The notes beneath the pieces were generated by a model that was not told the DNA's origin, made no database searches, and saw only the letters and a program-made list of their open reading frames with translations. Position numbers and translations under genes: made by a program. A stretch of DNA of 64,000 nucleotides, taken from assembly GCF_006345805.1 (NCBI RefSeq), contig NC_042999.1:80042001-80106000 (forward strand). Direction: 5' to 3'. This stretch comes from Octopus sinensis. Lineage: Eukaryota. Positions 8,414 through 63,095 of this stretch are shown here, piece by piece; within the stretch, counting starts at the first letter, position 1, and each line of letters opens with the position of its first letter.

Positions 8414-8472
<59 letters not shown>

Positions 8473-8485
8473 GGATGGATGGATG

Positions 8486-8548
<63 letters not shown>

Positions 8549-8585
8549 GGATGGATGGATGGATAGATAGATGGATGGATGGATG

Positions 8586-8631
<46 letters not shown>

Positions 8632-8657
8632 AAGATAGATAGATAGATAGATAGATG

Positions 8658-8689
<32 letters not shown>
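8256..8689. repeat. (GATA)n/(GATG)n tract, left boundary of the retrotransposon array
   Basis: About 434 bp of GATA units with GATG variants, directly abutting the 3' end of element A. Confidence 0.97.
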
Positions 8690-8988
8690 TGTTTCTTTAT
8701 TAGCCACACAGGGCTGCACACAGATAGAACAAATTACAAGGTAGAGCTTTTGTTTTGAAGGTTTAAAAAAAAAAAAAAAAAAAAAAAAGGAAAAAAAATT
8801 GATCGATAGGGATCGTTATCACAGAAATGTCAATATGAAGTGTAAAGGGGAGGACAGGTGAGGTTTACCCGTGGAAAGAAAAGCCTACGGAAAAGACCAC
8901 GGTAACCTCGGTCAATGAAGTCACATTTTATATTTCTTTTTTTTTTTTTTTTTGCAAATAAGCAACTCTCTGTTTTCGATTTCTGGGT

Positions 8989-11900
8989 TCATAGGACTAT
9001 GCTCAAGGTGGCTTCGTCATTCATACGTGCCATTCTTGCTACATTCACCCATCTTTTTTTAAAACATTCGCTAGACAAAACTTGCCTCTCTACTCTCACT
9101 TTCCTTTTCAAGTGGTACTTGAAGAAGTTGATGAGAGATTGACCAGAGAGGAAAGTGTTTGTCTCCAATCCTTTCAGACGCGTCCACCAGATACATTCTT
9201 TCGCCATAGCCACAAGGATGAAAATAGCTCTTCCTTCCCGTTTGAAGGAAGGAGGCGTGACAATATTGACGATAGACTCAGCTGATAAACCGACTCGTCC
9301 CACACGTGACAGCATTGTTCGACATAAGCCCACAGGTCGGAAATTGTTGGACACTGAACGAGTGCGTGCAGAACGGTTTCGTCGCTCTGACCGCATCTCG
9401 GGCAGGTCGGCCCCGTGTTTCTCGAGCCGTGTCTGTAGAGCTTATCCCGAACGGGTAGCGCTTCTCGGTAGCACTGCCAGGCCAGGGATCTCTGGAAGTT
9501 GTCCATGGGCCCTGGCCCGAAAGTCGTCCCGAACAGGCGGGTCAGGTACTCCTCGTCGACGTCCAGGTACGTCCCGAGCTCGTCGTCGTACCTCCCCTCC
9601 ACTAAACCCCTATAGAATGCTTTGGTTGTGTTGAAGTCACTTAAGGTCGACCCAGGACGGCAGAGTTGCTTGAGAGCAACGCGACACTCGCGGTGCCATT
9701 CGCCCTTCCTCGGCCTCTTTTTGATCCACGACTGCAGTTCGGTCATGGAGACGAGCTGCGGGAAAGCGTGCCTCACAAACGGCGACCACACCTGTTCACC
9801 GTCGTCTACATAGAGCCAGAGATGTCGCAGTCTCAGCGCGTGTCTGCGCATCATCAACCACGGCATGCCCAGCCCTCCTTTTAACGGGTGTTGACAGCAA
9901 ATGGATCGCCTGACCATCGGGACGCATCCTTTCCACAAGAAGCGAAAGAGGATGCGTTGTAGTTTGGTGATGGTAGGGTCGGGACAAGGTACGACGGTCA
10001 GGCGGTAGTAGATGACGGACGCGATGTACGTGTTCGCCACCTCCGCTCGACCTTTTAGGGACAGTTTCCTCTCGGCCCATTGCCGGGCGAGAGTGACCAC
10101 CCTACTCGTTATCTCGTTCCAGTTCTTCTCCACTTGGAGGTCCGGACCAAACCAGACCCCGAGCAACTCAACCGGGCCGTCGGTCCAGCGTCCCACGACG
10201 GAGGCGCTGGTGGACGGCATGGGCTTGCTTCTCCAGGTGCCTAGTCGCAAGCCCACTGACTTTTCCCGGTTGATTTTCGCTCCTGTCACCGCTTCGTAGT
10301 TTTTCAGTGTCTCGCCGACCAGCTCGATGTGCTCGTGGCTAGACACTATGACGGTGACGTCGTCCGCGTATGCAGACACGCTCGTCCCGCATCCCAATTC
10401 TCGCGGGATGTCCCTTAGAGTCGCCAGCTTCCGTAGTAGTGGCTCAAGAGTCAATACGTATAGAAGCGCCGAGAGGGGGCATCCCTGACGGACCGAACGT
10501 GCAATGTCGAAAGGTCTCGATAGATGTCCATTTACGCGAATTACCGAACGGGACCGAAACCAGCCGCTCTCAGGACTGCCTCCAAGTATCGATGGTCTAC
10601 CCTATCAAAGGCTTTCGATTGATCCAAGTTGATCAGGGCTCCACCTATGCCAGGTTCGTTAACTACCCTGTCTATGATGTAGCGCATCAGATGGAGGTTG
10701 TCATGGATGGTCCGGCCTGGCACGGCGCATGTTTGCGCCTTGTCGACCAGTTTCTCGATGACAAGCGCCAACCTCTTGGCTAGCACCTTGGCCAAAATTT
10801 TCAAGTCTGCATTAAGCAGAGTGATGGGCCTAAAGTTATCTATTACATTTCCCTTGTTTAGATCTTTCTTCAGCAGTGTTACGGCTCCTCGGCTCACAAA
10901 ACCAGGAATGCTCCCGTTTTGCTGCCATTGCAGTACACCGCCGCCGCCAGAGATCTCCAACAAGTCTGGCATACATTGTAAAGCTCGTAGGGTAGACCAT
11001 CCAAACCCGGTGATTTGTCCCTCGAGCATTCTGCCATCGCTTCCTGCACTTCCGCCGCCGTGATGGCACCTTCGCAGCACCCTGCCTTTCTTGTCGAGAG
11101 TCGTGGTAGGCTATGTAGGTAGGCACTGAAGTCCACCCTACGTTCTTGCCCTCCACTCGTTCCGAACAGTCGGGCAAAATGCTGCTGAAAGGCCTCACAC
11201 ATTTTACTTGGCTCGAGCATTCGCGCCCCTGTTCATCTACCAGTGACCGAATGGTGGCTTTGTTGCCCTGTTGCGCCTCTGCCACCCGGGCCTCTCTCGC
11301 GGCTCCAACACCTTCGTTCCTTAGAGCACGCATCCTAGCTCTGACAGCACATCCTTCGTGTTTGGCGTTGAAGTGTTGGTCGAGGGCCAACCTCGCCGCC
11401 AAAACGTCGGATGCGATGCCGCTTCTAATTGCCTCTTCTAGCTTCTTACTAGCTCACCCTCTACTCTATTTCTGTCTATGGCTAGTGCTTTGCTGTACCT
11501 AATCGCTTCTTCTGCTTTTACTGCTCTCTTGAGGGCAAACCACCATTTGTGTGTTGATGATGGCTCCCGTCAAAGCCCTCTTACTAGTGTGCTAATCCGG
11601 TCTCTGAAAACTTGTCTCGATGGGAAAGACGCGTTTAGTTTCCAGTATCCGGGACCCTGCCTAACTGTCTTACCTAAGTCTAGCGTACATGTCACAAGTT
11701 TGTGATCCGTGTAGCTGACTATGTGGAATTGTGGACATCCTATGCTATCTCTATCTACTGTCCTACACAGTATCCTATCTAGATACGATCTCGACGACCC
11801 GATGCGGTTGCTCCATGTCCACGTTGGCGCATTCGGTGTTCTAGTCGGAACCTGTCAGACAGTTGAAAGCGTCTGAGCAGGTCTCTGAGGCATTTGCATC

Positions 11901-12379
11901 CCCGTCTATTCCTATCTCTACCCACGTAGTCTACATGCGTGTCCAAGGTAGCATTCCAATCCCCCACTAAGAGTAAAGGACGAGACGTTCCCAAGAAATT
12001 TCTAGATGTTGAAAGAAATCCGCCCGACCTGTTAAGGGCGGTGCGTAAACTGATACGAGTCGAAAAGCGCACCCATTGCTGCCGTCGACATCCAGGACGA
12101 CCAGTCTACCCTCCGGGTCTACGAATATTGTCCTTACATTGAGATCCAGACTCTTGTGAAAAAGTACCGCGGTGCCACTACCGCCCATTCTCGGCAGACA
12201 GGGGAAAAATAAACGTTGAACTGTCCGCCAAACATGGTCTTTAAGGCCCGCGGATTGTGGAGTCTGGTCTCGCTTATGGCTATGATTTCTAACTTATGTG
12301 ACTTTATGTCATTTAAGAGGTACCCTTGTTTCCAAGGGGACCCCAAGCCACGCGCATTTACACAACCAATCTTGATCAT
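8989..12379 (-). pseudogene. ORF2 of copy A: APE endonuclease + reverse transcriptase + C-terminal Cys/His finger, frameshifted as assembled
   Basis: APE: MIKIGCVNARGL, ISETRL, VYAP, LVGDWN and a TDH-type end. RT: NFRPITLLNADLKILAKVLAKRL, LDQSKAFDRVDH, SAYADDVTV, GAKINREKS. C-terminus: CPRCGQSDETVLHALVQCP. Spread over ORFs 12134-12379, 11967-12188, 11779-12072, 10836-11402, 10894-11220, 10541-11080, 9174-10454 and 8989-9396. Confidence 0.92.
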
Positions 12380-12406
12380 AGTTCTAATGAATTAGAATAC
12401 AGAGGG

Positions 12407-14389
12407 TTACTTACTGCTCGCGAAAGTTTTTGCTTTCTCCTCCGTTGGTTTGTCCTCGAGAAGATCCCAGTACAGTTTCTTTGTGAGATATTTTTGGCAT
12501 TTACCAACCGCACTGGGGAAAATGCCTTTGAGTGTGTGGTGCAGACTTTTGGAGATGTGTAATATTTTGATGTGGTCTGGTGGTGTTGTGTGTATGGGTG
12601 ATTGTTTGTTTTTATGTCATCTTCTGTTATGTTTGTTTTGATTGGATGTATTCCATCAAATTTGTGTTTTTGGTGTCTATGGCTGTGAGCATGTTTGCTG
12701 TATATGTTTTTGTGGTGTTGGTGTGGCTGTTGTTTGCGTTGGGTTTTGAAATGTCTTCGGGAGATGTATTTCCCCCTGCTTTGTTCGTGTTTGCATTTGG
12801 TTTGGTTGTGTTTCCTCTCCTTATTTTCCTTCTTTTTGTAGCTATTTGCCATTCCTCACTGGTTTCGTCTTCCGACGAAATTTCTGAGGAATCAGAAGGG
12901 GGTAGGGGTATGTTGTGGGCTTCTATGTATGTCTGTGTAAGTGGTTGTGTTGTTGTTGGTTGTTGAGTGTTTGTGTGTGTTGAGTGCGGTATAAGGGATG
13001 GGGGATCAGTTTGTGTGTGTTTTCTTTGTTTTTCTGTTCCTTTGGGTTTTGCTGTTGATGGTGGTGTTGGTATTTTTTCAGGTGTCGAGTGGTTTTTGGT
13101 TGATGACGGATTAGCTTGGTGCTTCTCTTCTCTTGTCTTCTGTGTTGATGGTGGTGTGGGTAGTAGAGCTTTTTTTCCGGAGTGCTTTGGTTGTGGTAGT
13201 GGTTGTTGTTGTTGCTCTTGGTGTGCAGTGGTGGGCACGTCTTTTTCAAGTGTGTTTCGCTTCCACACAAATAGCAGCGTGGTCGCCTGCCCTCTACCAC
13301 TATATAGAGTTTGTAGCCTCCTGGCAGTTCTATAGCGGTGGGTATCTTCTCTCTTGCTGCTTCATCCAATTGAAGCAGGAATTCGATTGATTTGCCCACA
13401 TAGTCTTTCTCTCCTAGAACCGCGATTTCCAGGATGTTTGTCTCTGACATTGTCTCTGACATTTCAAAGCAGATGCAGAGACCAACCATTGTGTTTCGAC
13501 ATCAATGGTATGTTTTTTATTTGGACTTTCGTGACCCTTTTGTTTATAGACTGGTATCATTACCAAGTCGTCCGAATGCAGCTCCAATGTGGAAAAACGT
13601 TTTGCTAAACTTTCGTTGAGGAAACGTACTTGGACTGTACCAAATTTGTTTCCCCAACTGATATATTCCTTGGAGTCCCATACAGGACGAAGGCATTTAT
13701 CGATTTTTTCCTGCGGTGCATTTTCTGTTCTTCTTGTTTTTTTGTTTATTACTTTATAAATTATTGTTTTTTTTTGTGTGTTTTCCACGATGTGTTGTGG
13801 ATATGAAGGTGCAATTTGTCTCCTTCTTTGGAAGAGTGCCTTTGTGCGGTTTATCTCTTGTGTGGTGAATGTTACAATTGTTCTTTTTTGTTTTGTTACG
13901 TCCGCAAAATTCGTTTTGAATTTGGCAGTAGAAGTGTTAATTGTGGCAGTGTTAATTGAAGTCATGGTAGTGGTGTTGGTGTTGGCGGTATTAGCAGCAG
14001 AAGGCTTGGATGTAGCATTTGACGTCGTAGTAGTGGTGTTGGTGTTGGCGGTGTTGTCTTTGGTAGGCGGCTTTGTGCCAATTTCGTTGTTGTTGTTGTT
14101 GGTGGTGATGGTGGTGGTGCTGGCATTCATGTTTTCGTTTGTATTCATTTTTGAATCCCTTTCTCTGTCCCTTTATCATCAACAAGTGGGGTGGGGAGTG
14201 AGGGAATCTAATTTAATGTCTTTGGTCGCGGCGATGGTGAATGCGACGTTAGATTGTTGTTGTTGGTGGTGGTGGTGATGGTGGTGACAGCGTGTTCACG
14301 CTGCGATGTTTAGCAGCTAGTGGTAGCAATAGTGTTTTGCTACCGTTCTGCATGACTGGCGGGCTAGCCACGTGGTTTCTAGTTGCCAT
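12407..14389 (-). pseudogene. ORF1 of copy A: T/N-rich N-terminus, RRM-like region, single CCHC knuckle, basic patch; frameshifted
   Basis: ATG at 14389 (MATRNH, matching MATGHH of copy E). PVWDSKEYISWGNKFGTVQVRF; RPRCYLCGSETHLKKTCP (CX2CX4HX4C); EWQIATKRRKIRR. The C-terminal frame homologous to copy E ends at TAA 12407-12409. Confidence 0.85.
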
Positions 14390-14613
14390 TTTCAAAATGA
14401 AAAATGGCTAAAAAACCCACGAAAGTTTTGAAAGTTTTTTTGTAATTTCGCCCATACAGGGGCGGAATTCTACGTGAATAATTCTCAGGTTTTTTAGTGA
14501 ATGAACTTGCACAACAATTAAAACAAAATATTTGACAACAAGGAGTTTTAAACATGTAAAAGTGGCCAACTTACGTGGAGCCGATATGACTAGCGTCCGT
14601 CCATTGTGAGATG

Positions 14614-14717
<104 letters not shown>

Positions 14718-14742
14718 GGATAGATAGATAGATAGATAGATA

Positions 14743-16025
14743 TGTTTCTTTATTAGCCACACAGGGCTGCACACAGATAGAACAAATTACAAGGTAGAGC
14801 TTTTCTTTTGAAGGTTTAAAAAAAAAAAAAAGAAAAAGAAAAAATAGGAAGGGGGAGTTTCGATCAAAAGGGATCGTAAAAGGAGAGAAAGAGGACAAAA
14901 AAGGGGGGTTAAAAAAAAAAGGGGGGAGAGGAAGAAAAAAAAGAGAAAAAAAAAAAAAAAAATTGATCAATAGGGATCGTTATCACAGAAATGTCAATAT
15001 GAAGTGTAAAGGGGAGGACAGGTGAGGTTTACCCGTGGAAAGAAAAGCCTACGGAAAAGACCACGGTAACCTCGGTCAATGAAGTCACATGTTATATTTC
15101 TTTTTTTTTTTTTTTTTTGCAAATAAGCAACTCTCTGTTTTCAATTTCTGGGTTCATAGGATCATGCTCAAAGTGGCTTCGTCATTCATACGTGCCATTC
15201 TTGCTACATTCACCCATCTTTTTTTAAAACATTCGCTAGACAAAACTTGCCTCTCTACTCTCACTTTCCTTTTCAAGTGGTACTTGAAGAAGTTGATGAG
15301 AGATTGACCAGAGAGGAAAGTGTTTGTCTCCAATCCTTTCAGACGCGTCCACCAGATACATTCTTTCGCCATAGCCACAAGGATGATGAAAATAGCTCTT
15401 CGTTCCCGTTTGAAGGAGGGAGGTCGTGCGTGACAATATTAACGATAGACTCAGCTGATAAACCGACTCGTCCCACACGTGACAGCAGTTGTTCGACATA
15501 AGCCACAGGTCGGAAAGTGTTGGACACTGCACGAGTGCGTGCAGAACGGTTTCGTCGCTCTGACCGCATCTCGGGCAGGTCGGCCCCGTGTTTCTCGAGC
15601 CGTGTCTGTAGAGCTTATCCCGAACGGGTAGCGCTTCTCGGTAGCACTGCCAGGCCAGGGATCTCTGGAAGTTGTCCATGGGCCTGGCCCGAAAGTCGTC
15701 CTGAACAGGCGGGTCAGGTACTCCTCCTCGACGTCCAGGTTCGCCCCGAGCTCGTCGTCGTACCTCCCCTCCACTAAACCCCTATAGAATGCTTTGGTTG
15801 TGTGTGAAGTCACTCAAGGTCGACCCAGGACGGCAGAGTTGCTTGAGAGCAACGCGACACTCGCGGTGCCATTCGCCCTTCTTCGGCCTCTTTTTGATCC
15901 ACGACTGCAGTTCGGTCATGGAGACGAGCTGCGGGAAAGCGTGCCTCACAAACGGCGACCACGCCTGTTCACCGTCGTCTACATAGAGCCAGAGATGTCG
16001 CAGTCTCAGCGCGTGTCTGCGCATC

Positions 16026-16026
<1 letters not shown>
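14743..16026 (-). mobile_element. Tx1-like copy B, 5'-truncated (~1.28 kb)
   Basis: Same 3' end as A; contains the ORF2 C-terminus from [10 protein letters not shown] onward; GATA on both sides. Confidence 0.93.
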
Positions 16027-16070
<44 letters not shown>

Positions 16071-16082
16071 CATAGATAGATG

Positions 16083-16121
<39 letters not shown>

Positions 16122-16122
16122 G

Positions 16123-16182
<60 letters not shown>

Positions 16183-17607
16183 TGTTTCTTTATTAGCCAC
16201 ACAGGGCTGCACACAGATAGAACAAATTACAAGGTAGAGCTTTTCTTTTGAAGGTATTAAGAAGAAAAAAAAAAAAAAAAAAAAAAGGAAGGGGGAGGTT
16301 CGATCAAAAGGGATCGTAAAAGGAGAGAAAGAGGACAAAAAAAAAAAGAAAAAAAAGGGGGGGGAGAGGAAAAAGAAATGATCAATAGGGATCGTTATCA
16401 CAGAAATGTCAATATGAAGTGTAAAGGGGAGGACAGGTGAGGTTTACCCGTGGAAAGAAAAGCCTGCGGAAAAGACCACGGTAACCTCGGTCAATGAAGT
16501 CACATTTTATATTTCTTTTTTTTTTTTTTTTTTCAAATAAGCAACTCTCTGTTTTCGATTTCTGGGTTCATAGGACTATGCTCAAGGTGGCTTCGTCATT
16601 CATACGTGCCATTCTTGCTACATTCACCCATCTTTTTTTAAAACATTCGCTAGACAAAACTTGCCTCTCTACTCTTACTTTCCTTTTCAAGTGGTACTTG
16701 AAGAAGTTGATGAGAGATTGACCAGAGAGGAAAGTGTTTGTCTCCAATCCTTTCAGACGCGTCCACCAGATACATTCTTTCGCCATAGCCACAAGGATGA
16801 TGAAAATAGCTCTTCCTTCCCGTTTGAAGGAAGGAGGCGTGACAATATTGACGATAGACTCAGCTGATAAACCGACTCGTCCCACACGTGACAGCAGTTG
16901 TTCGACATAAGCCCACAGGTCGGAAATTGTTGGACACTGAACGAATGCGTGCAGAACGGTTTCGTCGCTCTGACCGCATCTCGGGCAGGTCGGCCCCGTG
17001 TTTCTCGAGCCGTGTCTGTAGAGCTTATCCCGAACGGGTAGCGCTTCTCGGTAGCACTGCCAGGCCAGGGATCTCTGGAAGTTGTCCATGGCCCTGGCCC
17101 GAAAGTCGTCCCGAACAGGCGGGTCAGGTACTCCTCGTCGACGTCCAGGTTCGCCCCGAGCTCGTCGTCGTACCTCCCCTCCACTAAACCCCTATAGAAT
17201 GCTTTGGTTGTGTTGAAGTCACTTAAGGTCGACCCAGGACGGCAGAGTTGCTTGAGAGCAACGCGACACTCGCGGTGCCATTCGCCCTTCCTCGGCCTCT
17301 TTTTGATCCACGACTGCAGTTCGGTCATGGAGACGAGCTGCGGGAAAGCGTGCCTCACAAACGGCGACCACACCTGTTCACCGTCGTCTACATAGAGCCA
17401 GAGATGTCGCAGTCTCAGCGCGTGTCTGCGCATCATCAACCACGGCATGCCCAGCCCTCCTTTTAACGGGTGTTGACAGCAAATGGATCGCCTGACCATC
17501 GGGACGCATCCTTTCCACAAGAAGCGAAAGAGGATGCGTTGTAGTTTGGTGATGGTAGGGTCGGGACAAGGTACGACGGTCAGGCGGTAGTAGATGACGG
17601 ACGCGAT
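16183..17607 (-). mobile_element. Tx1-like copy C, 5'-truncated (~1.43 kb)
   Basis: Same 3' end; ORFs 16753-17520 and 16568-17089 match the ORF2 C-terminus of A; GATA on both sides. Confidence 0.93.
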
Positions 17608-17628
17608 AGATAGATAGATAGATAGATG

Positions 17629-17671
<43 letters not shown>

Positions 17672-17672
17672 G

Positions 17673-17727
<55 letters not shown>

Positions 17728-17768
17728 GGATAGATAGATAGATAGGTAGATAGATAGATGGATAGATA

Positions 17769-18804
17769 TGTTTCTTTATTAGCCACACAGGGCTGCACAC
17801 AGATAGAACAAATTACAAGGTAGAGCTTTTCTTTTGAAGGTTTAAAAAAAAAAAAAAAAAAAAAAAAAAGGAAGGGGGTTTCGATCAAAAGGGATCGTAA
17901 AAGGAGAGAAAGAGGACAAAAAAAAGGGGGGGTTAAAAAAAAAAAAAAAAGGGGGAGAGGAAAAAAAAAAAAAAAAAAATTGATCAATAGGGATCGTTAT
18001 CACAGAAATGTCAATATGAAGTGTAAAGGGGGGGACAGGTGAGGTTTACCCGTGGAAAGAAAAGCCTACGGAAAAGACCACGGTAACCTCGGTCAATGAA
18101 GTCACATTTTATATTTCTTTTTTTTTTTTTTTTTTTTTTTGCAAATAAGCAACTCTCTGTTTTCGATTTCTGGGTTCATAGGACTATGCTCAAGGTGGCT
18201 TCGTCATTCATACGTGCCATTCTTGCTACATTCACCCATCTTTTTTTAAAACATTCGCTAGACAAAACTGCCTCTCTACTCTCACTTTCTTTTTCAAGTG
18301 GTACTTGAAGAGTTGATGAGAGATTGACCAGAGAGGAAAGTGTTTGTCTCCAATCCTTTCAGACGCGTCCACCAGATACATTCTTTCGCCATAGCCACAA
18401 GGATGATGAAAATAGCTCTTCCTTCCCGTTTGAAGGAAGGAGGCGTGACAATATTGACGATAGACTCAGCTGATAAACCGACTCGTCCCACACGTGACAG
18501 CAGTTGTTCGACATAAGCCCACAGGTCGGAAATTGTGGACACTGAACGAGTGCGTGCAGAACGGTTTCGTCGCTCTGACCGCATCTCGGGCAGGTCGGCC
18601 CCGTGTTTCTCGAGCCGTGTCTGTAGAGCTTATCCCGAACGGGTAGCGCTTCTCGGTAGCACTGCCAGGCCAGGGATCTCTGGAAGTTGTCCATGGGCCC
18701 TGGCCCGAAAGTCGTCCCGAACAGGCGGGTCAGGTACTCCTCGTCGACGTCCAGGTTCGCCCCGAGCTCGTCGTCGTACCTCCCCTCCACTAAACCCCTA
18801 TAGA
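17769..18804 (-). mobile_element. Tx1-like copy D, 5'-truncated (~1.04 kb)
   Basis: Same 3' end; ORFs 18359-18790 and 18294-18584; GATA on both sides. Confidence 0.93.
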
Positions 18805-18806
18805 TG

Positions 18807-18845
<39 letters not shown>

Positions 18846-18886
18846 GGATAGATAGATAGATAGATAGATAGGTAGATAGATAGATG

Positions 18887-18951
<65 letters not shown>

Positions 18952-19270
18952 CTTTCTTTTATTAGCCACACAGGGCTGAATACAGAGGGGACAAATACAA
19001 ATGCAGAGCTTTTCTTTTCGAGGGTGGAAAAATAGAAAACGTAAGATTGCGATCAAAAGGGATCGAGAGGAGGAAAAAAAGAAAAAAAAAAAAAAAAAAA
19101 AAAGAAAAAAAGGAAAATCGTGTATCACAGAAATAATGGTGTAAACATTGATATAACAAGATTGGGTTCATCCGTGGGAAGAAAAGCCTACAGAAAAGAC
19201 CACGGAACCCCAGTCAGGGAGGAAATAAACACATGAGGTCAAAAATGCTCTCTTTCTTTCTTTTTACGAT

Positions 19271-22200
19271 CTACAGGATCATGCTCAAAATGGTTTCGTT
19301 ACTAGCACGCACCATCTTTGCAACATTCACCCATCTTTTTTTGAATCTTTCGCGAGACAAAACTTCCCTCTCCATTCTCACCTTCCTTTTCAAGTGGTAC
19401 TTGAAAAAGTTGATGAGCGATTGGCCAGAGAGGTAAGTGTTTGTCTCTAATCCTTTCGCTCGAGTCCACCACACACATTCTTTCACCATGGCCACCAGTA
19501 CGATGAAAACTGCCTTGCCTTCCCGGTTGAGGGAAGGGGGCGGAGCAATACTCACGATAGACTCGGCCGATAGGCGGATTCGTCCCACACGTGACAGCAG
19601 CCGTTCGGCATAAGCCCACAGGTCGGAAATGGTTGGACATTGCACGAGTGCGTGCAGAACGGTTTCGTCGCTCTGACCGCATCTCGGGCAAGTCGGTCCA
19701 GTGTGTCTGGAACCGTGTCTGTAGAGCTTATCCCGAACAGGTAATGCTTCTCGATAGCACTGCCAGGCCAGGGATCTTTGGTGATGTTCATAGGTCCCGG
19801 CCCGAATGTTGTCCTGAACAGGCGGGTCAGGTGTTCCTCGTCGACGCCCAGACTCTGCCCGAGTTCGTCGTCGCACCTCCCCTCCACTAATCCTCTATAG
19901 AATGCCTTTGTTGTGATGGAGTCGCACAAGTTCGATCCCGGACGGCAGAGGCTTGAGAGCAACGCGACACTCGCGGTGCCATTCGCCTAGCCTCGGTCTC
20001 TGCTTGATCCATGACTGTAGTTCGTCCAAGGAGACGAGCTGCGGGAAAGCGCGCCGCACAAAAGGCGACCACCCCTGTTCACCGTTGTCTATGAAGCGCC
20101 GGAGATGTCGCAGTCTCAGCGCATGTCTGCGCATCATCAACCACGGCATGCCCAGCCCTCCATTTAGCGGGTGTTGGCAGCAAATGGATCGCCTAACCAT
20201 CGGAACGTTTCCTTCCACAAGAAGCGGAAGAGTATGCGTTCCAGTTTGGTGATGGTAGGGTCGGGACAAGGCACGACGGTCAGACGATACTCGATGACGG
20301 ATGCGATGTACGCGTTCGCCACCTCCGCCCGACCTTTTAGGGATAGCTTTCTCTCAGTCCATTTCTGGGTGAGAGTAGCCACCCTAGTCGTTATCTCGCC
20401 CAGTTCTTCTCCATTTGGAGGTCCGGACCGAACCAGACCCCGAGCAATTTAACCGGTCCGTCCGTCCAGCGTCCCACGATGGAGACCTTGTTGGACGGCA
20501 TGGGCTTGCTTCTCCAGGTGCCGAGCCGCAAGCCCACTGACTTTTCCCGGTTAATTTTTGCTCCCGTTACCGCTTCGTATTCTTTCAGTGTCTCGCCGAC
20601 CAGCTCGATGTGCTCGTAGCTCGACACTATGACGGTGACGTCATCCGCGTATGCAGACACGCTCCTCCCGCATCCCAGCTCAGCGTCGCCAGTTTCCGCA
20701 GTAGTGGCTCAAGAGTCAGTACATACAGCAGCGATGAGAGGGGGCATCCCTGACGAACCGAACGCATGATGTTAAAAGGTCTGGATAGATGACCATTTAC
20801 GCGAACTACTGAGCGGATGCCGCTGTATAAGGCAGCGATCCAACCGCGGAAAACTGGACCGAAACCAGCCGCTTTGAGGACAGCCTCCAAGTAGTGATGG
20901 TCTACCTATCGAAGGCTTTTGATTGATCCAAATTGATCAGCGCCCCACCCATGCCAGGATTTTTAACTACCCTGTCTATGATGTAGCGCATCAGATGGAG
21001 GTTGTCATGAATACTTCTACCGGGCAGGCGCATGTTTGCGCCTTGTCGATTAGTTTCTGATGACAAGCGCCAAACCTCTCGGCTAACACCTTGGCCAAAA
21101 TTTTCAAATCTGCGTTGAGCAGAGTGATGGGCCTGAAATTATCTATGACGTCCCCCTGTTTGGGTCTTTCTTGATCAGTGCCACTGCTCCTCGCTTTACA
21201 AAAGCAGGAATACTCCCGTTCTGCTGCCAGTTGCAGTAGACAGCTGCCAAGACGCCTCCAAACAAGTCTGGCATATGAAAATAAAATTCGTGGGCAGACC
21301 ATCCAAGCCTGGTGACTTGTCTCTCGCGCAGCCTACCATCGCATCCTGTACATCCGCCAGCTGTGATAGGCTTTTCACAAGACTCCACCTCCCTTGCTGA
21401 GAGTCGTGGCAAGGCATGCAGGTAGGCACTAAAGTCCACTCTGCTTTCTGACTCACCACTTGTCCCAAACAGTGGGTGAAGTGTTGTTGAAAAACCCCAC
21501 ACACTTTTAGGCTCGAGCAATTCGCGCCCCGTTCATCTATAAGAGACTTGATGGTGGCTCTGTTGCCTCGTTGCGTCTCCACCACTCGGGCCTCTTGGGC
21601 GGCTCCAACTCCTTCGTTCCTCAGAGCACGCCATCCTAGCTCTGACAACGCATCCCTCGTGTTTGGCGTTGAGGTGTTGGTCGAGGGCCAATCTCGCCGC
21701 CAGTACGTTGGACGCGATGCCAGTTCTAAGTGCCTCTTCTAAAACCTTAACTAATTCTCCCTCTATTCTATTTCGGTCTAATGCTAGGGCTCTACTGTAT
21801 CTGACTGATTCTGCTTTAATCGCTTTTTAGGGCATACCACCATCTGTTGTTGATGATGGTACCCGTCAAAGCTCTCTTAACTAATGTGCTGATCCGGTCC
21901 CTGTAAACCTGTCGTGCTGTAAAAGACGCGTTCAGTTTCCAGTAACCAGGATCCTGCCTATGTGTCTTATCTAAGTCAAGTGTACAAGTCACAACTTGTG
22001 ATCTGTGTAACTGACTATATGAAATTGTGGACAACCTACACTATTTTTATCTATTGTCCTACAGAATACTCTATCTAAGTATGATCTGGACGACCCGATG
22101 CGGTTACTCCATGTCCACATTGGCACATTCGGGTGGGGTCCAGTCGGTACCTGTCAGACAGTTGGAAACGTCTGAGCAGGTCTTTGAGGCATTTGCATCC

Positions 22201-22678
22201 CCTTCTATTGCTATCTCTGCCACGTAGTCTAGATGCGTGTCCAGGGTGGCATTCCAATCCCCCACTAAAAGTAAAGGACGAGACGTTCCCATGAAAGACT
22301 CTAGACGTCGAAAGAATCTGGTCGGCCTGTTAAGGACGGAGCATAAACTGCTATCAGTCGAAAAGCACACTCATTGCTGCCATCGACATCCAAAACGACC
22401 AGCCTACCCTCCGGGTCTAGGAAATTTGCTCTTACTTTGAGATCCAGACTCTTCCGGATAAGCACCGCGGTGCCACCTCCGCCCATTCTCGGTAGACACG
22501 GAGAAAAATAAATGTTGAAATGTGTACCGAAAATGTGCTGGAGTGCCCGCAAGCTGTGGAGTCTGGTCTCACTGGTGGCTATGATATTCAGATTTAGTGA
22601 CTTGATGTCATTTAACAGGTAGCCTTGTTTCCAAGGCGACCCCAAGCCACGTACATTTATACTACCTATTCTGAGCAT
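19271..22678 (-). pseudogene. ORF2 of copy E: APE + RT + Cys/His finger, frameshifted as assembled
   Basis: MLRIGSINVRGLGSPWKQG, ETRL, VYAP, VGDWN, NFRPITLLNADLKILAKV, SVRQGCPLS, SAYADDVTV, CPRCGQSDETVLHALVQCP. Confidence 0.92.
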
Positions 22679-22720
22679 GTTCCGATAAAAGTGTAAAAAA
22701 GGAAAAGGAGAGAGAAAAGG

Positions 22721-24851
22721 TTACTTGTTTTTCGAAAGTTCTTTGTCTTTCACCTCACGGTCTTCTTCTATGAGGCTTTTATACAGTTTTTTTTCGATGA
22801 GTACTTTTGAAATCTCCCTACTGCATCAGGGTAAAGAGATTTCAGGGTGCTGTATGTGTTCTGTGTCACGTGTATTATTTTAATGTGTTGTGGTGGTGTT
22901 GTGTGTGGGTGGTTACTTGTTTTTATGTCGTTTTCAGTAATGTTAGTGTTTGACCTAATGTGTTCCATTAGTCGTGGTTGTTTGTGTTTATGGCTGTCAA
23001 CATTTTTGGGGGTTGATGATGGTGTGTTTGTGTTGATGTGTGTGTTTTCTGTGGATGTTTTTGTTTCGGGAGTGGTGTATCTTCCCGCTTTGTTTGTTAT
23101 TTTTTTTTCTTTTTTTTTTTTCCCCTTTTTCTTCTCCCCCGTGGCTATTTGCCAATCTTCCGTGTCTTCTTCGTCTAATGACAGATCAGACGAATCGGAG
23201 TCTGGAAGAGGGAAAGTATTGGGGTCTATTGTCGACTGTGTTGGTTTTGTTGTTGGTGTTGGTTGGTGAGCGTTTGGTTGTGTGTATGCGGTTTTGGATG
23301 TGGGGTTTGGGTATTTTGTGTTTGAGTGATTGTGGGTATTGTTGTGTTGTTTAGGGTCTCAATTTTGTGGGGATTTGGAGTTGTAATTGTTTCTTCTTTT
23401 TTTCTTCTTGTCTTTTGGGTGTCTTTTGGCAGATGTCCTTGGTTTGGGAGTTGGTATATTCTTGGTTGTTGTTGTTGGTGATGCTGCAGTTTGGTGTGGT
23501 TGTTTGTTTGGTGAGGTTTGTTCCTGCAAAAAGTGGTGTGGGTAGTAAACCTTGTTTATTTGTTTTTGTTTCCGGCTGCTGTTGTTGTTGCTGTTGTTTT
23601 CTTGCGGCAGATTTGCAGTCTTTTTTGAGGTGTTGCTCACTGCCGCATATGTAGCAACGTGGTCTTCTGCCATCGACGACCACATATAACTTGTGGTCGT
23701 CTGATACACATATCTGGGTGGGTATTTTTTTTATATCTTCATGATGTATATGTAGAAGAAATTCTTTTTTTGTCCCACCCAGTTTTTTATGCTCTGTGAC
23801 TGTGGTTTCCAAAATAGTATAATTCGCCATTTTTACGCATAAGGCCTTTACAAGCCATAGACTATTGGCTATTTTGGGGACATTGTTTAGAGTGATCTTA
23901 GTCACTTTCTGTCCCCGATAGCTTGGTGTAAGTTGGAGTTCATCTGAGTGAAGAGTTAGCGTTGAGAAATGTCTAGCTAACTCATCGGTGTAGAAAACAA
24001 CTTGTATGTGGGCAAATTTGTTCCACCAGGTTACATATTCTTTGTGATCCCAGATGGGTTTCAAGCACTTCTCTATTTTGCTTGTGTTGGCCTTCTCTGG
24101 GATTTTTGTTTTTTTTGTTAACTATTTTATAAATGATTGTTCGTCTTTTTTCATTTTCCAAAATATCTTCTGGTATGTTTATTTTTACTATATCTTCTGA
24201 TTCTGTTATTTTGATGTTCGTGTCCTGTATTTGTTGAGCCGTAAAGTATATTGTTGTTTTTTTTTCTTTAATCGCCTCAGCGAAATTTGTTGTTGTTTTG
24301 TTATTGTTGTTGCTTGTGGTGATGTTGTTGTTGGCTGCAGTTTGTAAAATTGGTGTGTTTGGTTCGATCGTGCTAGTAGGAAGGGGTGGAAAATTGCCTG
24401 CGTACTTTAGTCCTGCACTAGGGCAAAATTCGACATTTCGTTTGCTTGTCGTCGTTATTTTTTCACTTGTTGGTGATGGAGTGAGCAGTGGTTGAAGGGA
24501 ATTGTTTTTGTTGTTATTGTCGTTCTTGGTGACGGCGGTGGTGTTGGTAGTATTAGTAGCATTGACGGCACGGTCTTTGGTGGCGGTGATGGTGATGTTG
24601 GTGTTGTTATTGGTGGCGATATCTTTAGTAGGGATAGCAGTTTTAGTAGCAAATTCTGCCATGGTGTTGGTGGTGGTGGTGGACTCACTGATGGTGTTGA
24701 CGGTGCTTGGCCTTGCGACCTTTGTTTTGTATTTGTTGCTGTTGGTGGTGGTGGAGTTGTCAGGTTCGGTGTATGCTAACAGAGCATCCTGTTTTTCTGT
24801 TTCTGCGTCACGCTTGACTTGGAACTCAGCCTCGTGGTGGCCAGTGGCCAT
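22721..24851 (-). pseudogene. ORF1 of copy E
   Basis: ATG at 24851 (MATGHH); T/N-rich N-terminus; KPIWDHKEYVTWWNKFAHIQVVF; RPRCYICGSEQHLKKDC knuckle. The end is placed at the AAG-TAA-CC motif shared with copy A (inference). Confidence 0.82.
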
Positions 24852-25085
24852 TTTGGAAATAAAATGGCTAAATGAAACCACGAAGGCTATGAGAATTTTT
24901 TCTTTTAAATTTTGCCCACAAGGGGCAAAATTTTGTGTCGATATTTATCAAAGGTTTACAGTGGATGTTGTTGCACAACTTTTAAGCACAAAATGTTTGT
25001 CAATATACACTTTTAAATAGTCAAAATAAATGATTACCTTCGGAGCTGAAACGACATCACATCCGTCAGAGAGAGAGAGAGAGAG

Positions 25086-25234
<149 letters not shown>

Positions 25235-25355
25235 TACACATGGTTCCGGGTTCAGTCCCACTGCGTGGCACTTTGGGCAAGTGTCTTCTACTATAGCCTC
25301 GGGCCGACCAAAGCCTTGTGAATGGATTTGATAGACTGAAACTGAATGAAGGCCA

Positions 25356-25423
<68 letters not shown>

Positions 25424-36774: not shown

Positions 36775-36962
36775 TCTTTTCTACTCTAGACACCAGGCCC
36801 AAAATTTTGGGGAAGGGGACCAGTCGATTAGATCAACCCCAGTTCGCAACTGGTTCTTAATTTATCGATCCCCGGAAGGATGAAAGGCAAAGTCGACTTC
36901 GGCGGAATTCGAAATCAGAACGTAAAGGCAGACGAAATATCGCTAAGCATTTCGCTAACGAT
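36775..36962 (-). mobile_element. SINE family 2-related copy with a different 3' end
   Basis: Shares GGATGAAAGGCAAAGTCGAC...GGAATT with the family 2 copies. Confidence 0.7.
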
Positions 36963-36963
36963 T

Positions 36964-37197
36964 CTTATTTCTTTATTGCCTACAAGGGGCTAAACATAGA
37001 GGGGACAAACAAGGACAAACAAAGGTATTAAGTCGATTACATCGACCCCAGTGCGTAACTGGTACTTAATTTATCGACCTTGAAAGGATGAAAGGCAAAG
37101 TCGACTTCAGCGGAATTTGATCTCAGAACGTAACGGCAGACGAAATACAGCTCAGCATTTCGCCCGGCGTGCTAACGTTTCTGCCAGCTCGCCGCCT
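36964..37197 (-). mobile_element. tRNA-derived SINE family 2, full length
   Basis: Reverse complement of the 49307 copy; head GGCGGCGAGCTGGCAGAAACGTTAGC, tail ...AATAAAGAAATA. Confidence 0.88.
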
Positions 37198-48988: not shown

Positions 48989-49306
48989 ATATTCATTCCA
49001 GATCTCACTGTTGACGGTACAAACAACAATTTTGATCTTAGAGGTTTTTCTGTATTTCTGTATTGTTATATTTTAGACCGACTAGAGCTACAATAATGTT
49101 AATGGTCTGAAATTTTGGCAGAAGAAAGTGCTCATCAATTATTTCAACACCAGAGCTCAACTAGTGCTTATTTTATCGACTACTAAAGAATGACAGACAA
49201 AATCGACCTCTGTGGAATTTGAACTCAGTACATAAAGATGGAAGAAATTTCACTAAACATTTTGTCCTGCGTGCTAACGATCATGTCATTCGATTAATGT
49301 TCAAAA

Positions 49307-49537
49307 GGCGGCGAACTGGCAGACACGTTAGCACGCCGGGCGAAATGCGTAGCCGTATTTCGTCTGTCGTTACGTTCCGAGTTCAAATTCCGCCGAAGTC
49401 GACTTTGCCTTTCATCCTTTCGGGGTCGATAAATTAAGTACCAGCTACGCACTGGGGTCGATATAATCGACTTAATCCCTTTGTCTGTCCTTGTTTGTCC
49501 CCTCTATGTTTAGCCCCTTGTGGGCAATAAAGAAATA
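49307..49537 (+). mobile_element. tRNA-derived SINE family 2, full length, with a 25-bp TSD
   Basis: Head GGCGGCGAACTGGCAGACACGTTAGC, B-box-like GAGTTCAAATTCC, tail TTTGTCCCCTCT...AATAAAGAAATA. Flanking repeats at 49282-49306 and 49538-49562. Confidence 0.92.
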
Positions 49538-50725
49538 CATGCCATTCGATTAATGTTCAAAATTATACTATGCATTATCAACAAGAGTCGTGATTGAGAG
49601 AATATGTAAATTATGTGGGTTGTCGGCGGAGGAATGTCACTGAAGATTGCGTTTTGCATCAAAATGAGTCAGGTTGTCTGAACCGATTCTTGTTCACCTA
49701 ATAGCTACGTAGTGATGAATTAAACTTAGCTAACGAACAACTCGTTAATTTATAAATTGTAAAAGAGGAAAGATTTAATCAGCTACCTCATAACTAACGA
49801 GATTGTAAAGAAAACAAAATGAGAGACCGTTTTGTTTTATTAACTATTCTATGCAATCATTTAATCTTTAAATGCTAGGGCCTTACAAACCGTTATATTG
49901 TCCCACAGACGGGCGTTATTGCAAGGAAGTTAGTTCCAAAATGATCGGTTTTCGGTTTTCTCGCTGATATTTTCCAAACTTCGCCGATACACGTCTGCGA
50001 AAAACATACGAAGACACGTCAACGCACATGCCCGCGCATGCACATATGCGCGCGCTTACACAGACACACGCGTGCCCGCACGGACGCACACACAAACACA
50101 GAAATACATATACTGTGTGTGTATTTGTGCTTACAGAGAGACAAAGAAAGGGAAGGAGACAGAGGAGTAGATAGATAAGCTGAGTAGACTATTCCACTTT
50201 CTTTCTCTATCTCGCTTTCTCTCTGTCTGTCTGTCTGTCTCTCTCTTTCTCTTGCTCTCGCGCTCTCTATCCGTCTATATATACATACATGCATATATAC
50301 ATTTGCGAGTGTATGTATATATAACAACACAAACACACACACACACATTAATGACGGGTTTTCGTACAGGTTCCGTTTACCAAATTCTGCGAAGAAGGTA
50401 TTCGTCACAGTCCTAGAAACCTGCCCCGGATGCTATCGTCGTGACCGGATCTCTGATCTTCGGAGTTATGAAGCAATTATTTTTTTAAAGTTACTCTCTC
50501 TTCCCACCACTTTATCAATGAACCTTTCATTCTTAATGTTTTTTTCTTATCCAAGGCAATTCTGTTTCTTCTATTCACAAATTGTTCCTTACTAGGGTAT
50601 TTGATGTTTGATTAGTGTACTGCATTTCCTTTGTAACTACATAAATTTGGACTCGCCAGATTCCGTTCCGATATCCATAGTATATTCGGCGATGATGTAT
50701 TCAATAATTTCTTGAAATTACACAT

Positions 50726-62680: not shown

Positions 62681-62864
62681 GAGGGCTTTGTCGCGAAAAT
62701 AAAGAGATGTGGGTTCGAGTACTACGCGTAAGGGAAAACCTAAAACCTACTTTGCCTCATTATTAGACTATTTTCTTTAGTCAATTTGCGGTGATCGCTT
62801 ACAAGCATTAAGCTTATAAAATACTATTATTACTATTTGCGGAAGATAATAATAATACTTTGTA

Positions 62865-63095
62865 TTTTGTTTCCTCTGTGTGGCCAATAAAGAAATATAT
62901 GTTTGTCTCTGTCTATATTTTTTCTTGTTTTACGATCCCTTTTGATCGAACACCTATCCCCTTTTTTTCTTTTTTTTTTTCTCCCCAAAAAGAAAAGCTC
63001 TACTTTGTAATTTGTCCGCTCTGTGTGGCTAATAAAGAAACATATCTATCTGCTTGTTTCTGTCTGTCTGTTTGTCTATCTATCTATCTATCAGT
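62865..63095 (+). mobile_element. Relic 3' ends of the Tx1-like family (two tandem tails)
   Basis: ...CTCTGTGTGGCCAATAAAGAAATATAT, then CGATCCCTTTTGATCG..AAGAAAAGCTCTACTTTGTAATTTGT..CTGTGTGGCTAATAAAGAAACA|TATCTATC. Confidence 0.85.

What the first reader, a model, noticed from the sequence alone, without database searches (positions are those of the whole stretch)
18951..19000. SINE family 2 shares its 3' tail with Tx1-like subfamily E
Seen: E ends TTTGTCCCCTCTGTATTCAGCCCTGTGTGGCTAATAAA, and the SINE (49495-49532; also 36964-37010) ends TTTGTCCCCTCTATGTTTAGCCCCTTGTGGGCAATAAA, 31/38 identical without gaps. The SINE also has an upstream GTCGAT-ATA-ATCGAC hairpin reminiscent of the LINE CGATC/GATCG stem. 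Known: SINEs often borrow the 3' end of their partner LINE. Inference: this SINE is mobilised by this Tx1 lineage or a relative. The SINE copies here are not in GATA, which implies a non-specific sister LINE or uncoupling of tail recognition from targeting.
Basis: partly seen in the sequence, partly recalled or inferred. Interest (0 to 1): 0.76.

Follow-up and report, generated by a model that had tools for sequence, protein, structure and literature searches.

The report
Octopus SINE borrows LINE 3' tail
A short non-autonomous retrotransposon (SINE) in this octopus-type genome ends with the same roughly 45-base tail as a family of L1/Tx1-like LINEs.

Summary
The last 44 bases of the SINE (49494-49537) match the last 44 bases of the LINE copies (E 18952-18995; M 8690-8733) at 33/44 without gaps. 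No dinucleotide shuffle exceeded 28/44 against the whole window. The match lies at the 3' terminus of both elements.

The LINE has APE, RT and zf-RVT domains, and human L1 ORF2p is its closest solved structure. All its copies here abut (GATA)n. The same tail ends every related octopod LINE lineage I could fetch (Octopus sinensis, Argonauta hians, stray metagenome contigs), although their proteins are only 43-80% identical.

The SINE tail is closest to LINEs that are not in GATA: O. sinensis 40/47 (85%) and an Argonauta lineage ending in (ATT)n 38/46 (83%), against E 76% and M 72%. In Argonauta at least two unrelated SINE bodies carry that species' own LINE tail.

The "upstream hairpin" resemblance is not homology. 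This is a new SINE/LINE pair of a known kind, unusual mainly because L1-group LINEs rarely share specific tails with SINEs.

The parts
49307..49537 (+). SINE family 2, complete copy (231 bp). It has a tRNA-like head with a box-B-like GAGTTCAAATTCC, a conserved body and a LINE-like tail, and ends ...AATAAAGAAATA with no poly(A).
   Evidence: It contains no run of four or more T. ARAGORN and Rfam find no tRNA.
49282..49306 (+). 5' target-site duplication of the SINE, CATGTCATTCGATTAATGTTCAAAA. The 3' copy is at 49538-49562 with one mismatch.
49538..49562 (+). 3' target-site duplication, CATGCCATTCGATTAATGTTCAAAA. It is not a GATA repeat.
49478..49537 (+). LINE-derived tail of the SINE. The last 44-46 nt align without gaps to the LINE termini, and weaker similarity runs to about 60 nt. 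The inner hairpin GCCC-CTTGT-GGGC is at 49513-49525.
36966..37196 (-). Second SINE family 2 unit, 93% identical to the first, with its tail at 36966-37025. It is the 5' unit of a dimer and has no target-site duplication of its own.
36775..36965 (-). 5'-truncated SINE unit with the same body but a different tail (...CTAGAGTAGAAAAGA). It is joined directly to the tail of the unit above. The pair is flanked by one 16-nt duplication, at 37199-37214 and 36759-36774.
18951..25069 (-). LINE copy 'E', full length (6119 bp) with decayed reading frames. ORF1 has a weak CCHC match and ORF2 has APE, RT and zf-RVT. (GATA)n lies at both ends.
18951..19010 (-). 3' tail of E, the region named in the finding. 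It ends ...TTTGTCCCCTCTGTATTCAGCCCTGTGTGGCTAATAAAAGAAAGTT followed by (TATC)n. The inner hairpin AGCC-CTGTGT-GGCT is at 18965-18978.
8690..14608 (-). LINE copy 'M', full length (5919 bp), 73% nucleotide identity to E. Its tail (8690-8751) ends ...GCAGCCCTGTGTGGCTAATAAAGAAACA followed by (TATC)n.
14743..18799 (-). Three 5'-truncated M-type LINE copies (14743-16025, 16183-17604, 17769-18799). Each ends with the same tail and abuts a (GATA)n array (14609-14742, 16026-16182, 17605-17768, 18800-18950).
62857..63042 (+). Two very short LINE 3' fragments (62857-62897 ending GAAATA, and about 62921-63042 ending GAAACA followed by TATCTATC). Both carry a 15-nt deletion that removes the 5' arm of the tail hairpin.
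49457..49471 (+). SINE body hairpin GTCGAT-ATA-ATCGAC. It belongs to the SINE body, not to the LINE-derived tail.
   Evidence: It is present in SINE copies with other tails and in the O. sinensis and Argonauta homologues.
19050..19065 (-). LINE 3'UTR hairpin CGATC-CCTTTT-GATCG, about 100 nt upstream of the LINE 3' end and outside the region shared with the SINE.

Best explanation
SINE family 2 has three parts. Its head is tRNA-like and presumably drives Pol III transcription. Its body is conserved and shared with other octopod SINE subfamilies. Its last 45-60 bases were copied from the 3' end of an octopod L1/Tx1-like LINE group.

That LINE group has no poly(A). It ends in a conserved motif: a small hairpin (4-bp stem, CUUGU or CUGUGU loop), then AAUAAAG-AAAY, with or without a lineage-specific short repeat ((TATC)n, (ATT)n, CTAT or nothing).

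The inferred mechanism is the 'stringent' SINE/LINE model. The LINE ORF2 protein recognises this 3' motif on its own RNA to start target-primed reverse transcription. SINE RNA carrying the same motif is taken as a template in trans.

Target choice belongs to the LINE's endonuclease and its terminal repeat, not to the shared motif. The SINE's tail is closest to LINE lineages that do not sit in GATA. The SINE is therefore most likely driven by a non-GATA sister lineage, not by the GATA-associated copies M and E in this window.

Shown: the homology, its position at the 3' terminus of both elements, its conservation across lineages, and the better match to non-GATA LINEs. Inferred: protein recognition of the tail, and which lineage is the driver in this genome.
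For: The tail match is significant and terminal. It is 33/44 ungapped against a shuffle maximum of 28/44 over the whole window, and the LINE tails are the only significant non-SINE blastn hits.

The LINE is an L1-group element. Pfam finds Exo_endo_phos, RVT_1 and zf-RVT. The closest solved structure is human LINE-1 ORF2p at 7e-43, against R2 at 1e-22.

The same tail ends every related octopod LINE I could fetch: O. sinensis L002, Argonauta L001 and L005 (two copies), JGI contig L012, and a decayed version in Logan contigs L009/L010. Their C-terminal proteins are only 43-80% identical, while the tails are 70-85% identical to the SINE tail. The tail is thus conserved at least as well as the protein.

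End-anchored identity of the SINE tail is: O. sinensis non-repeat LINE 40/47 = 85%, Argonauta (ATT)-ended LINE 38/46 = 83%, E 35/46 = 76%, M 33/46 = 72%. A blastn of the SINE against the O. sinensis LINE tail gives 88% over 43 nt (E-value 7e-8).

The Argonauta loci repeat the pattern. Forty-three kb hold about 33 tail occurrences on at least two unrelated SINE bodies. Their consensus tail best matches an Argonauta LINE (33/38 = 87%) and shares its terminal CTAT.

In the window the same SINE body occurs with at least four different tails, so tails are swapped as modules.

The SINE has no run of four or more T. The LINE 3'UTR T-runs, which would stop Pol III, end 75-77 nt from the 3' end, just upstream of the shared segment.

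For the hairpin, RNAfold gives the same three-tier stem-loop for seven intact tails. On a hand-made alignment of eight tails, RNAalifold keeps the inner 4-bp stem with one G-C to C-G swap in the SINE and three pair types at the closing pair. On 31 sequences, pair counts are 75.8% paired against 31-53% when the partners are slid, and the covariation score is 0.168 against 0.136 in shuffles, reached by 2 of 500.
Against: The better-matching LINEs come from other species. The window holds only GATA-lineage LINE copies: tblastn finds no other LINE ORF and no other tail of this type apart from the two SINE copies. The presence of a non-GATA lineage in this genome is therefore assumed, not shown.

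The ranking rests on single LINE copies, not consensus sequences, and on 3-7 differences in 46 nt.

Only one SINE copy in the window is an independent insertion with its own target-site duplication.

The structural evidence is weak. Single-sequence z-scores run from about 0 to -2.5. RNAalifold on the unedited 31-sequence alignment predicts no pairs. The one compensatory change is in two related SINE copies. Two short LINE fragments (62857-63042) share a deletion of the hairpin's 5' arm, which suggests the hairpin may be dispensable.

No tRNA is detected in the SINE head by ARAGORN or Rfam.

L1-group LINEs are generally of the 'relaxed' poly(A) type (PMC3472496), so stringent recognition here is an inference.
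Confidence: 0.62

Rival explanations
1. The SINE is mobilised by the GATA-associated lineage itself (E or a close relative), as the reader first proposed. Under this view tail recognition is uncoupled from targeting. SINE RNA lacks the terminal (UAUC)n, so it cannot anneal to nicked GATA repeats and is integrated at other nicks.
For: E and M are the only LINEs of the group in the window, in five copies plus two short tails. E shares the exact 12-mer TTTGTCCCCTCT with the SINE. One short GATA-lineage tail (62857-62897) ends GAAATA like the SINE. The Argonauta elements end in CTAT, 1 to 1.5 units of the TATC repeat, which suggests the terminal repeat is a variable add-on to a common tail.
Against: The SINE tail is 9-13 percentage points closer to non-GATA LINE tails. 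All four GATA-lineage tails share CCCTGTGTGG (a 6-nt loop), whereas the SINE and all non-GATA LINEs share CCCTTGTGG (a 5-nt loop). None of the eight GATA arrays in the window carries a SINE family 2 tail.
Confidence: 0.22
2. The direction of transfer is the reverse, or a third party is the source. Either the LINE group picked up its terminal motif from a SINE, or both took it from something else, and the shared tail says nothing about who mobilises whom.
For: Sequence similarity alone is symmetric. A tail-like hairpin also sits in the LINE 5'UTR (24898-24930), which shows that this motif can turn up in other contexts.
Against: The motif ends every sampled LINE lineage of the group, across proteins only 43-80% identical and in both Octopus and Argonauta. 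Among SINEs it is only one of several interchangeable tails on the same body, and it occurs on unrelated bodies. The simplest reading is an old LINE feature copied repeatedly into SINEs.
Confidence: 0.06
3. The similarity is a chance or compositional effect of T-rich sequence plus a polyadenylation-like AATAAA.
For: The tails are short and T/G-rich, and part of the match is AATAAAGAAA.
Against: The match is 33/44 against a maximum of 28/44 in 300 dinucleotide shuffles searched over 128 kb of sequence (both strands). It lies at the 3' terminus of both elements. It recurs independently in O. sinensis and Argonauta with species-matched variants.
Confidence: 0.01

Closest known systems
Stringent-type SINE/LINE pairs with a common 3' tail, such as eel UnaSINE1/UnaL2, tortoise Pol III SINE/CR1 and tobacco TS/RTE (Ohshima and Okada; Kajikawa and Okada 2002, as cited in PMC3472496 and PMC4494074)
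   Same: The SINE's last 45-60 nt are homologous to the LINE's 3' terminus and end at the same point. There is no poly(A). A small stem-loop lies near the end. The tRNA-like head and body are unrelated to the LINE. Tails are exchanged as modules between SINE subfamilies.
   Different: The LINE here belongs to the L1 group, not to CR1, L2 or RTE. No experiment shows that the tail is required.
L1-clade LINEs with a specific tail shared by SINEs: maize LINE1-1_ZM with ZmSINE2/3 and Chlamydomonas L1-1_CR with SINEX-3_CR (Ohshima 2012, PMC3472496)
   Same: An L1-group ORF2, a conserved 3' end with a stem-loop, and SINEs carrying the same end. [quoted passage not shown]
   Different: Those examples are from plants and algae and end in poly(A). 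The octopod elements are from animals and end in the motif itself or a short microsatellite unit.
Tx1-Mar LINEs and SINEU in crocodilians (Kojima 2015, PMC4494074)
   Same: A Tx1-type, target-specific LINE inferred to mobilise a SINE family.
   Different: In that case the link is a shared target (a Mariner transposon) and SINEU has a poly(A) tail. Here the link is a shared specific tail and the target is not shared.
Microsatellite-specific Tx1-clade LINEs: Kibi (TC)n, Koshi (TTC)n and crocodilian (TTCC)n/(TTTC)n families (Kojima and Fujiwara 2004, as cited in PMC4494074)
   Same: An APE-type L1-group LINE whose copies sit head-to-tail in one microsatellite.
   Different: The repeat is (GATA)n here, and (ATT)n in sister lineages. 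Neither is mentioned in the papers I could search. Clade membership was not tested by phylogeny.
Octopus SINEs OK, OR1 and OR2 (Ohshima and Okada 1994, cited in PMC4824008)
   Same: tRNA-derived SINEs of octopus. OR1 is a CORE-SINE, and an OR1-like CORE element lies at 25235-25357.
   Different: I could not compare sequences because that paper is not held here. Whether SINE family 2 equals OK or OR2 is unknown. None of the papers I could read names a LINE partner for an octopus SINE.

Membership tests
SINE/LINE pair with a common 3' tail | The SINE 3' end is homologous to the LINE 3' end and ends at the same point. | tested here: met
   33/44 ungapped against a shuffle maximum of 28. Both tails run to the element terminus.
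SINE/LINE pair with a common 3' tail | The SINE is a short non-coding retroposon flanked by target-site duplications. | tested here: met
   The element is 231 bp and flanked by a 25-bp duplication with one mismatch.
SINE/LINE pair with a common 3' tail | The SINE head derives from a Pol III gene (tRNA) with A and B boxes. | tested here: inconclusive
   A box-B-like GAGTTCAAATTCC is present here and GTGTTCGAATCCC in the Argonauta homologue. ARAGORN and Rfam detect no tRNA. The SINE contains no internal T4 terminator.
SINE/LINE pair with a common 3' tail | The best-matching partner LINE is present in the same genome and was active at the same time. | not testable with these tools
   Only 64 kb of this genome is available. 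The best-matching LINE tails are from O. sinensis and Argonauta.
SINE/LINE pair with a common 3' tail | The tail is required for mobilisation in trans. | not testable with these tools
   This needs a retrotransposition assay.
L1 group of non-LTR retrotransposons | ORF2 carries an N-terminal APE endonuclease, an RT and a C-terminal Cys-rich domain, and its RT is closest to L1. | tested here: met
   Pfam finds Exo_endo_phos, RVT_1 and zf-RVT. The best PDB hit is human LINE-1 ORF2p at 7e-43, against R2 at 1e-22.
Tx1 clade (within the L1 group) | The ORF2 groups phylogenetically with Tx1 reference elements. | not tested
   No Tx1 reference sequences were available. No named Tx1 protein appeared among the homologues. 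A 2026 O. vulgaris repeat annotation does list active 'L1-Tx1' families (PMC13282606).
Tx1 clade (within the L1 group) | Insertion is target-specific, into a repeat or multicopy gene. | tested here: met
   All five copies and both short fragments in the window abut (GATA)n or TATC-like sequence at the 3' end. Both full-length copies have it at the 5' end too. Whether the repeat is the target or a self-made 3' tail is not resolved.
Tx1 clade (within the L1 group) | ORF1 carries a CCHC zinc knuckle. | tested here: inconclusive
   The zf-CCHC match has E-value 6.8e-4 and 20.1 bits, just below Pfam's cut-off of 20.8.

The most novel reading that the evidence does not exclude
An animal L1/Tx1-like LINE group uses stringent, sequence-specific recognition of a 3' stem-loop plus AAUAAAG motif. 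On this reading the motif has been kept across Octopoda and is a main engine of the large octopod SINE expansions; tails of this type occur about once per 1.3 kb in the Argonauta loci. Only the last few bases differ between lineages ((TATC)n, (ATT)n, CTAT or none), and they set where each lineage lands. One RNA-recognition module would then serve several targeting modes, and SINEs exploit the module without inheriting the target.
Probability: 0.3. Interest if true: 0.6.

Novelty: new member of a known kind. Interest (0 to 1): 0.4.

Why it matters
SINEs make up roughly 4-12% of octopus genomes and have been linked to genome rearrangement and neural expression (PMC13282606, PMC12988792). None of the papers I could search names the LINE that drives any octopus SINE, and most O. 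vulgaris SINE families are listed as unclassified.

A tail-sharing pair identifies a candidate driver. It also gives a simple genome-wide test: compare tail types, insertion sites and age profiles.

The pair adds an animal example to the very few L1-group LINEs known to share a specific tail with SINEs. That bears on whether stringent 3'-end recognition is ancestral in the L1 group. The contrast between a conserved tail and lineage-specific terminal repeats offers a natural system for separating RNA recognition from target choice.

Tried and rejected
- **tRNA origin of the SINE head.** ARAGORN found nothing. Rfam gave only a sub-threshold mir-9261 match caused by two inverted SINE heads.
Rejected, because the SINE hairpin is part of the body shared with copies that carry other tails.
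- **Consensus structure.** RNAalifold on the unedited 31-sequence tail alignment predicted no pairs. Only a hand-adjusted alignment of eight intact tails recovered the inner stem. Single-sequence folding energies are not significant.
- **Other LINEs in the window.** I looked for a non-GATA LINE of the group or any other LINE ORF and found none.
- **More distant LINE relatives.** Two relatives on ENA contigs (L003, L004; 43-54% protein identity; unknown host) have no such tail and no such SINE.
- **Tx1 placement.** A third homologue search with the Argonauta ORF2 returned no named Tx1 protein among the best 120 hits.
- **Missing or cut contigs.** One contig look-up (P0004) was not on record. 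Three short contigs (L006, L007, L011) end before the tail.
- **Target-site duplication of the O. sinensis LINE copy.** It is ambiguous because the flank is itself locally repetitive.
- **Source species.** I could not identify the window's species.

Full report
**What is at the coordinates.** Positions 18951-19000 are the 3' end, on the minus strand, of a 6.1-kb LINE copy ('E', 18951-25069). Read in sense, it ends ...TTTGTCCCCTCTGTATTCAGCCCTGTGTGGCTAATAAAAGAAAGTT and runs straight into (TATC)n, the (GATA)n array at 18800-18950.

A second full-length copy ('M', 8690-14608, 73% nucleotide identity to E) and three 5'-truncated M-type copies (14743-16025, 16183-17604, 17769-18799) lie head-to-tail in the same orientation. 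Each ends ...GCAGCCCTGTGTGGCTAATAAAGAAACA next to a GATA array.

The decayed reading frames carry Exo_endo_phos, RVT_1 and zf-RVT domains, plus a weak CCHC knuckle in ORF1. The closest solved structure to a related intact ORF2 is human LINE-1 ORF2p (7e-43, against 1e-22 for R2). The best named protein relatives are from Argonauta hians (64% identity) and Octopus sinensis (50%), so the window comes from an octopod.

**The SINE.** The element at 49307-49537 is 231 bp and is flanked by a 25-bp target-site duplication (49282-49306 and 49538-49562, one mismatch). It has a box-B-like motif in its head and no poly(A), and it ends ...AATAAAGAAATA.

A second unit (36966-37196, minus strand, 93% identical) is the 5' half of a dimer. 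Its tail is joined directly to a 5'-truncated unit with the same body but a different tail (36775-36965). One 16-nt duplication flanks the pair. Only one copy in the window is therefore an independent insertion.

The same body also occurs with other tails at 49135-49279, 41178-41362 and 31272-31359. Tails are evidently exchanged as modules.

Taken to the true termini, the SINE's last 44 nt match the last 44 nt of M and of E at 33/44 without gaps. In 300 dinucleotide-preserving shuffles of the SINE tail, each scored against both strands of the whole window, the best hit averaged 25.0 and never passed 28. A blastn of the whole SINE against the window finds the LINE tails as its only significant non-SINE hits. 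The match lies at the 3' terminus of both elements. The similarity is real and is not a composition effect.

**The hairpin remark.** Both hairpins exist: SINE at 49457-49471, LINE at 19050-19065. The SINE hairpin belongs to the SINE body, which is shared with copies carrying other tails and with the O. sinensis and Argonauta homologues. The LINE hairpin lies about 100 nt upstream of the LINE 3' end, outside the shared segment. I see no homology there.

**Related sequences from elsewhere.** I fetched DNA around related ORF2 proteins. Every octopod member of the group whose 3' end was on the contig carries the same terminal motif:

| LINE (locus) | What follows the tail |
|---|---|
| O. sinensis (L002) | ordinary flanking sequence, no repeat |
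| Logan contigs (L009/L010), decayed tail | ordinary flanking sequence, no repeat |
| Argonauta (L001) | CTAT |
| Argonauta (L005), two copies | (ATT)n |
| JGI contig (L012) | (ATT)n |

The C-terminal 175 residues of these proteins are only 43-80% identical. The no-repeat lineage branches deepest, and the GATA lineage is nested next to an (ATT)n lineage. The tail is thus conserved at least as well as the protein, which argues for function. Two more distant relatives from an unidentified host lack both the tail and the SINE.

**Which LINE fits the SINE best.** End-anchored identity over the last 46 nt:

| LINE tail | Identity to the SINE tail |
|---|---|
| O. sinensis, no repeat | 40/47 (85%) |
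| Argonauta, (ATT)n-ended (L005a) | 38/46 (83%) |
| E (window, GATA) | 35/46 (76%) |
| Argonauta, (ATT)n-ended (L005b) | 35/46 (76%) |
| Logan L009, no repeat (decayed) | 35/46 (76%) |
| JGI L012, (ATT)n-ended | 34/46 (74%) |
| M (window, GATA) | 33/46 (72%) |
| Argonauta L001, CTAT-ended | 33/47 (70%) |

Diagnostic states agree with the top of this ranking. All four GATA-lineage tails in the window read CCCTGTGTGG. The SINE and all non-GATA LINEs read CCCTTGTGG. The block CTCTATGTTT is shared by the SINE, the O. sinensis LINE, one Argonauta LINE and the Logan contigs.

In Argonauta, about 33 tails occur in 43 kb on at least two unrelated SINE bodies. Their consensus best matches an Argonauta LINE (33/38, 87%) and shares its terminal CTAT. 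SINE and LINE tails therefore track each other within each species, as expected for working partners.

**Structure.** RNAfold gives the same three-tier stem-loop for seven intact tails, but the energies are not significant. On 31 sequences the proposed pairs are formed in 75.8% of cells, against 31-53% when the partners are slid. The covariation score is reached by 2 of 500 shuffles.

RNAalifold finds nothing on that unedited alignment. On a hand-adjusted alignment of eight intact tails it keeps only the inner 4-bp stem. There the SINE has a G-C to C-G swap and the closing pair varies among G-C, G-U and A-U. Two short LINE fragments (62857-63042) lack the 5' arm altogether. I treat the hairpin as plausible, not shown.

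**How it most likely works.** This is the usual stringent model. The LINE ORF2 protein recognises the 3' motif of its RNA and starts target-primed reverse transcription there. Pol III transcripts of the SINE that end in the same motif are used in trans.

Two details fit. The SINE has no run of four or more T. The LINE's long T-runs, which would stop Pol III, end 75-77 nt from the 3' end, just upstream of the shared segment.

Targeting appears to be separate from the shared motif, because lineages with the same motif end in (TATC)n, (ATT)n, CTAT or nothing. The SINE's own insertion site is ordinary sequence. I therefore favour a non-GATA sister lineage as the driver.

The weak point is that no such lineage is visible in the 64 kb available, and the ranking rests on single copies from other species.

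**Comparison with what is known.** Shared SINE/LINE tails are textbook. What is less common is the clade. [quoted passage not shown] Kojima (PMC4494074) linked SINEU to Tx1-Mar by shared target, not by a specific tail.

None of the papers I could search names a LINE partner for an octopus SINE. A 2026 O. vulgaris annotation lists active L1-Tx1 families and about 900 mostly unclassified SINE families (PMC13282606). Repbase and Dfam could not be checked, so the pair may already be catalogued there. 'Tx1-like' fits the domain set and the repeat-associated insertion but was not tested by phylogeny.

**Verdict.** This is a new SINE/LINE pair of a known kind, of moderate interest.

Noticed in passing
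window 24898-24930 (-) and 14444-14464 (-): Both LINE subfamilies have a conserved hairpin in the 5'UTR, about 140-170 nt from the 5' end. E's version (TTTTGCCCCTTGTGGGCAAAATTTAAAAGAAAA) shares an exact 13-mer with the SINE's 3' hairpin and resembles the tail of the older SINE copy at 41178-41206. A 3'-tail-like motif inside a LINE 5'UTR is unexplained.
   Followed up: partly
window 36775-37196 (-), duplications at 37199-37214 and 36759-36774: This is a SINE dimer: a full family 2 unit joined by its tail to a 5'-truncated unit with a different tail, with one 16-nt target-site duplication around the pair. It looks like a single event, either template switching during reverse transcription or a dimeric source element.
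   Followed up: partly
window 36775-36965, 49135-49279, 41178-41362, 31272-31359: The same SINE body occurs with at least three other 3' tails: ...CTAGAGTAGAAAAGA, ...GCCATTGTGGCAAAAATTTGAAATAA followed by (CAA)n(TAA)n, and one more. This implies several LINE partners or repeated tail swapping. The O. sinensis locus L002 (3237-3365) has the CTAGAG-type tail.
   Followed up: no
window 62857-62897 and about 62921-63042 (+): Two very short LINE 3' fragments lie in degenerate TATC-like sequence. Both share a 15-nt deletion that removes the 5' arm of the tail hairpin. One ends GAAATA like the SINE.
   Followed up: partly
window 8255-25234: A 17-kb head-to-tail array of five LINE copies is separated by (GATA)n arrays of 134-435 bp. 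The searchable Tx1 papers list (TC)n, (TTC)n and (TTCC)n/(TTTC)n as microsatellite targets, not GATA. Whether GATA is the target or a self-made 3' repeat is open.
   Followed up: partly
L005 4790-4900 and 11130-11210; L012 1960-2105: Sister LINE lineages in Argonauta and in a JGI contig end in long (ATT)n runs instead of (TATC)n. The terminal repeat appears to be lineage-specific.
   Followed up: no
L001 and L005 (Argonauta hians, 43 kb): About 33 occurrences of the tail are found, on at least two unrelated SINE bodies, including a triple tandem at L005 4900-5355. Nearly all are followed by CTAT. Target-site duplications suggest that CTA(T) is the element's own end.
   Followed up: partly
proteins P0001, P0002, P0004, P0006: Octopod LINE ORF2 fragments are filed in metagenome records. 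One is named as a Herbaspirillum MAG protein. This is host DNA carried into metagenome bins.
   Followed up: no
window 25235-25357: A CORE-type SINE (...CTTTGGGCAAGTGTCTTCTACTATAGCCTCGGGCCGACC..., like the octopus OR1 family described as a CORE-SINE in PMC4824008) sits directly beside the GATA array at E's 5' end and is followed by (GT)n.
   Followed up: no
window 58381-59940 and 60022-61512: Tandem Repeats Finder rows repeat exactly with an offset of 1641 bases, which indicates a tandem duplication of about 1.6 kb.
   Followed up: no
window 49256-49351: A weak Rfam mir-9261 match (24 bits against a gathering score of 86) is produced by two SINE heads in inverted orientation. It is a long inverted repeat, not evidence of a microRNA.
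   Followed up: yes
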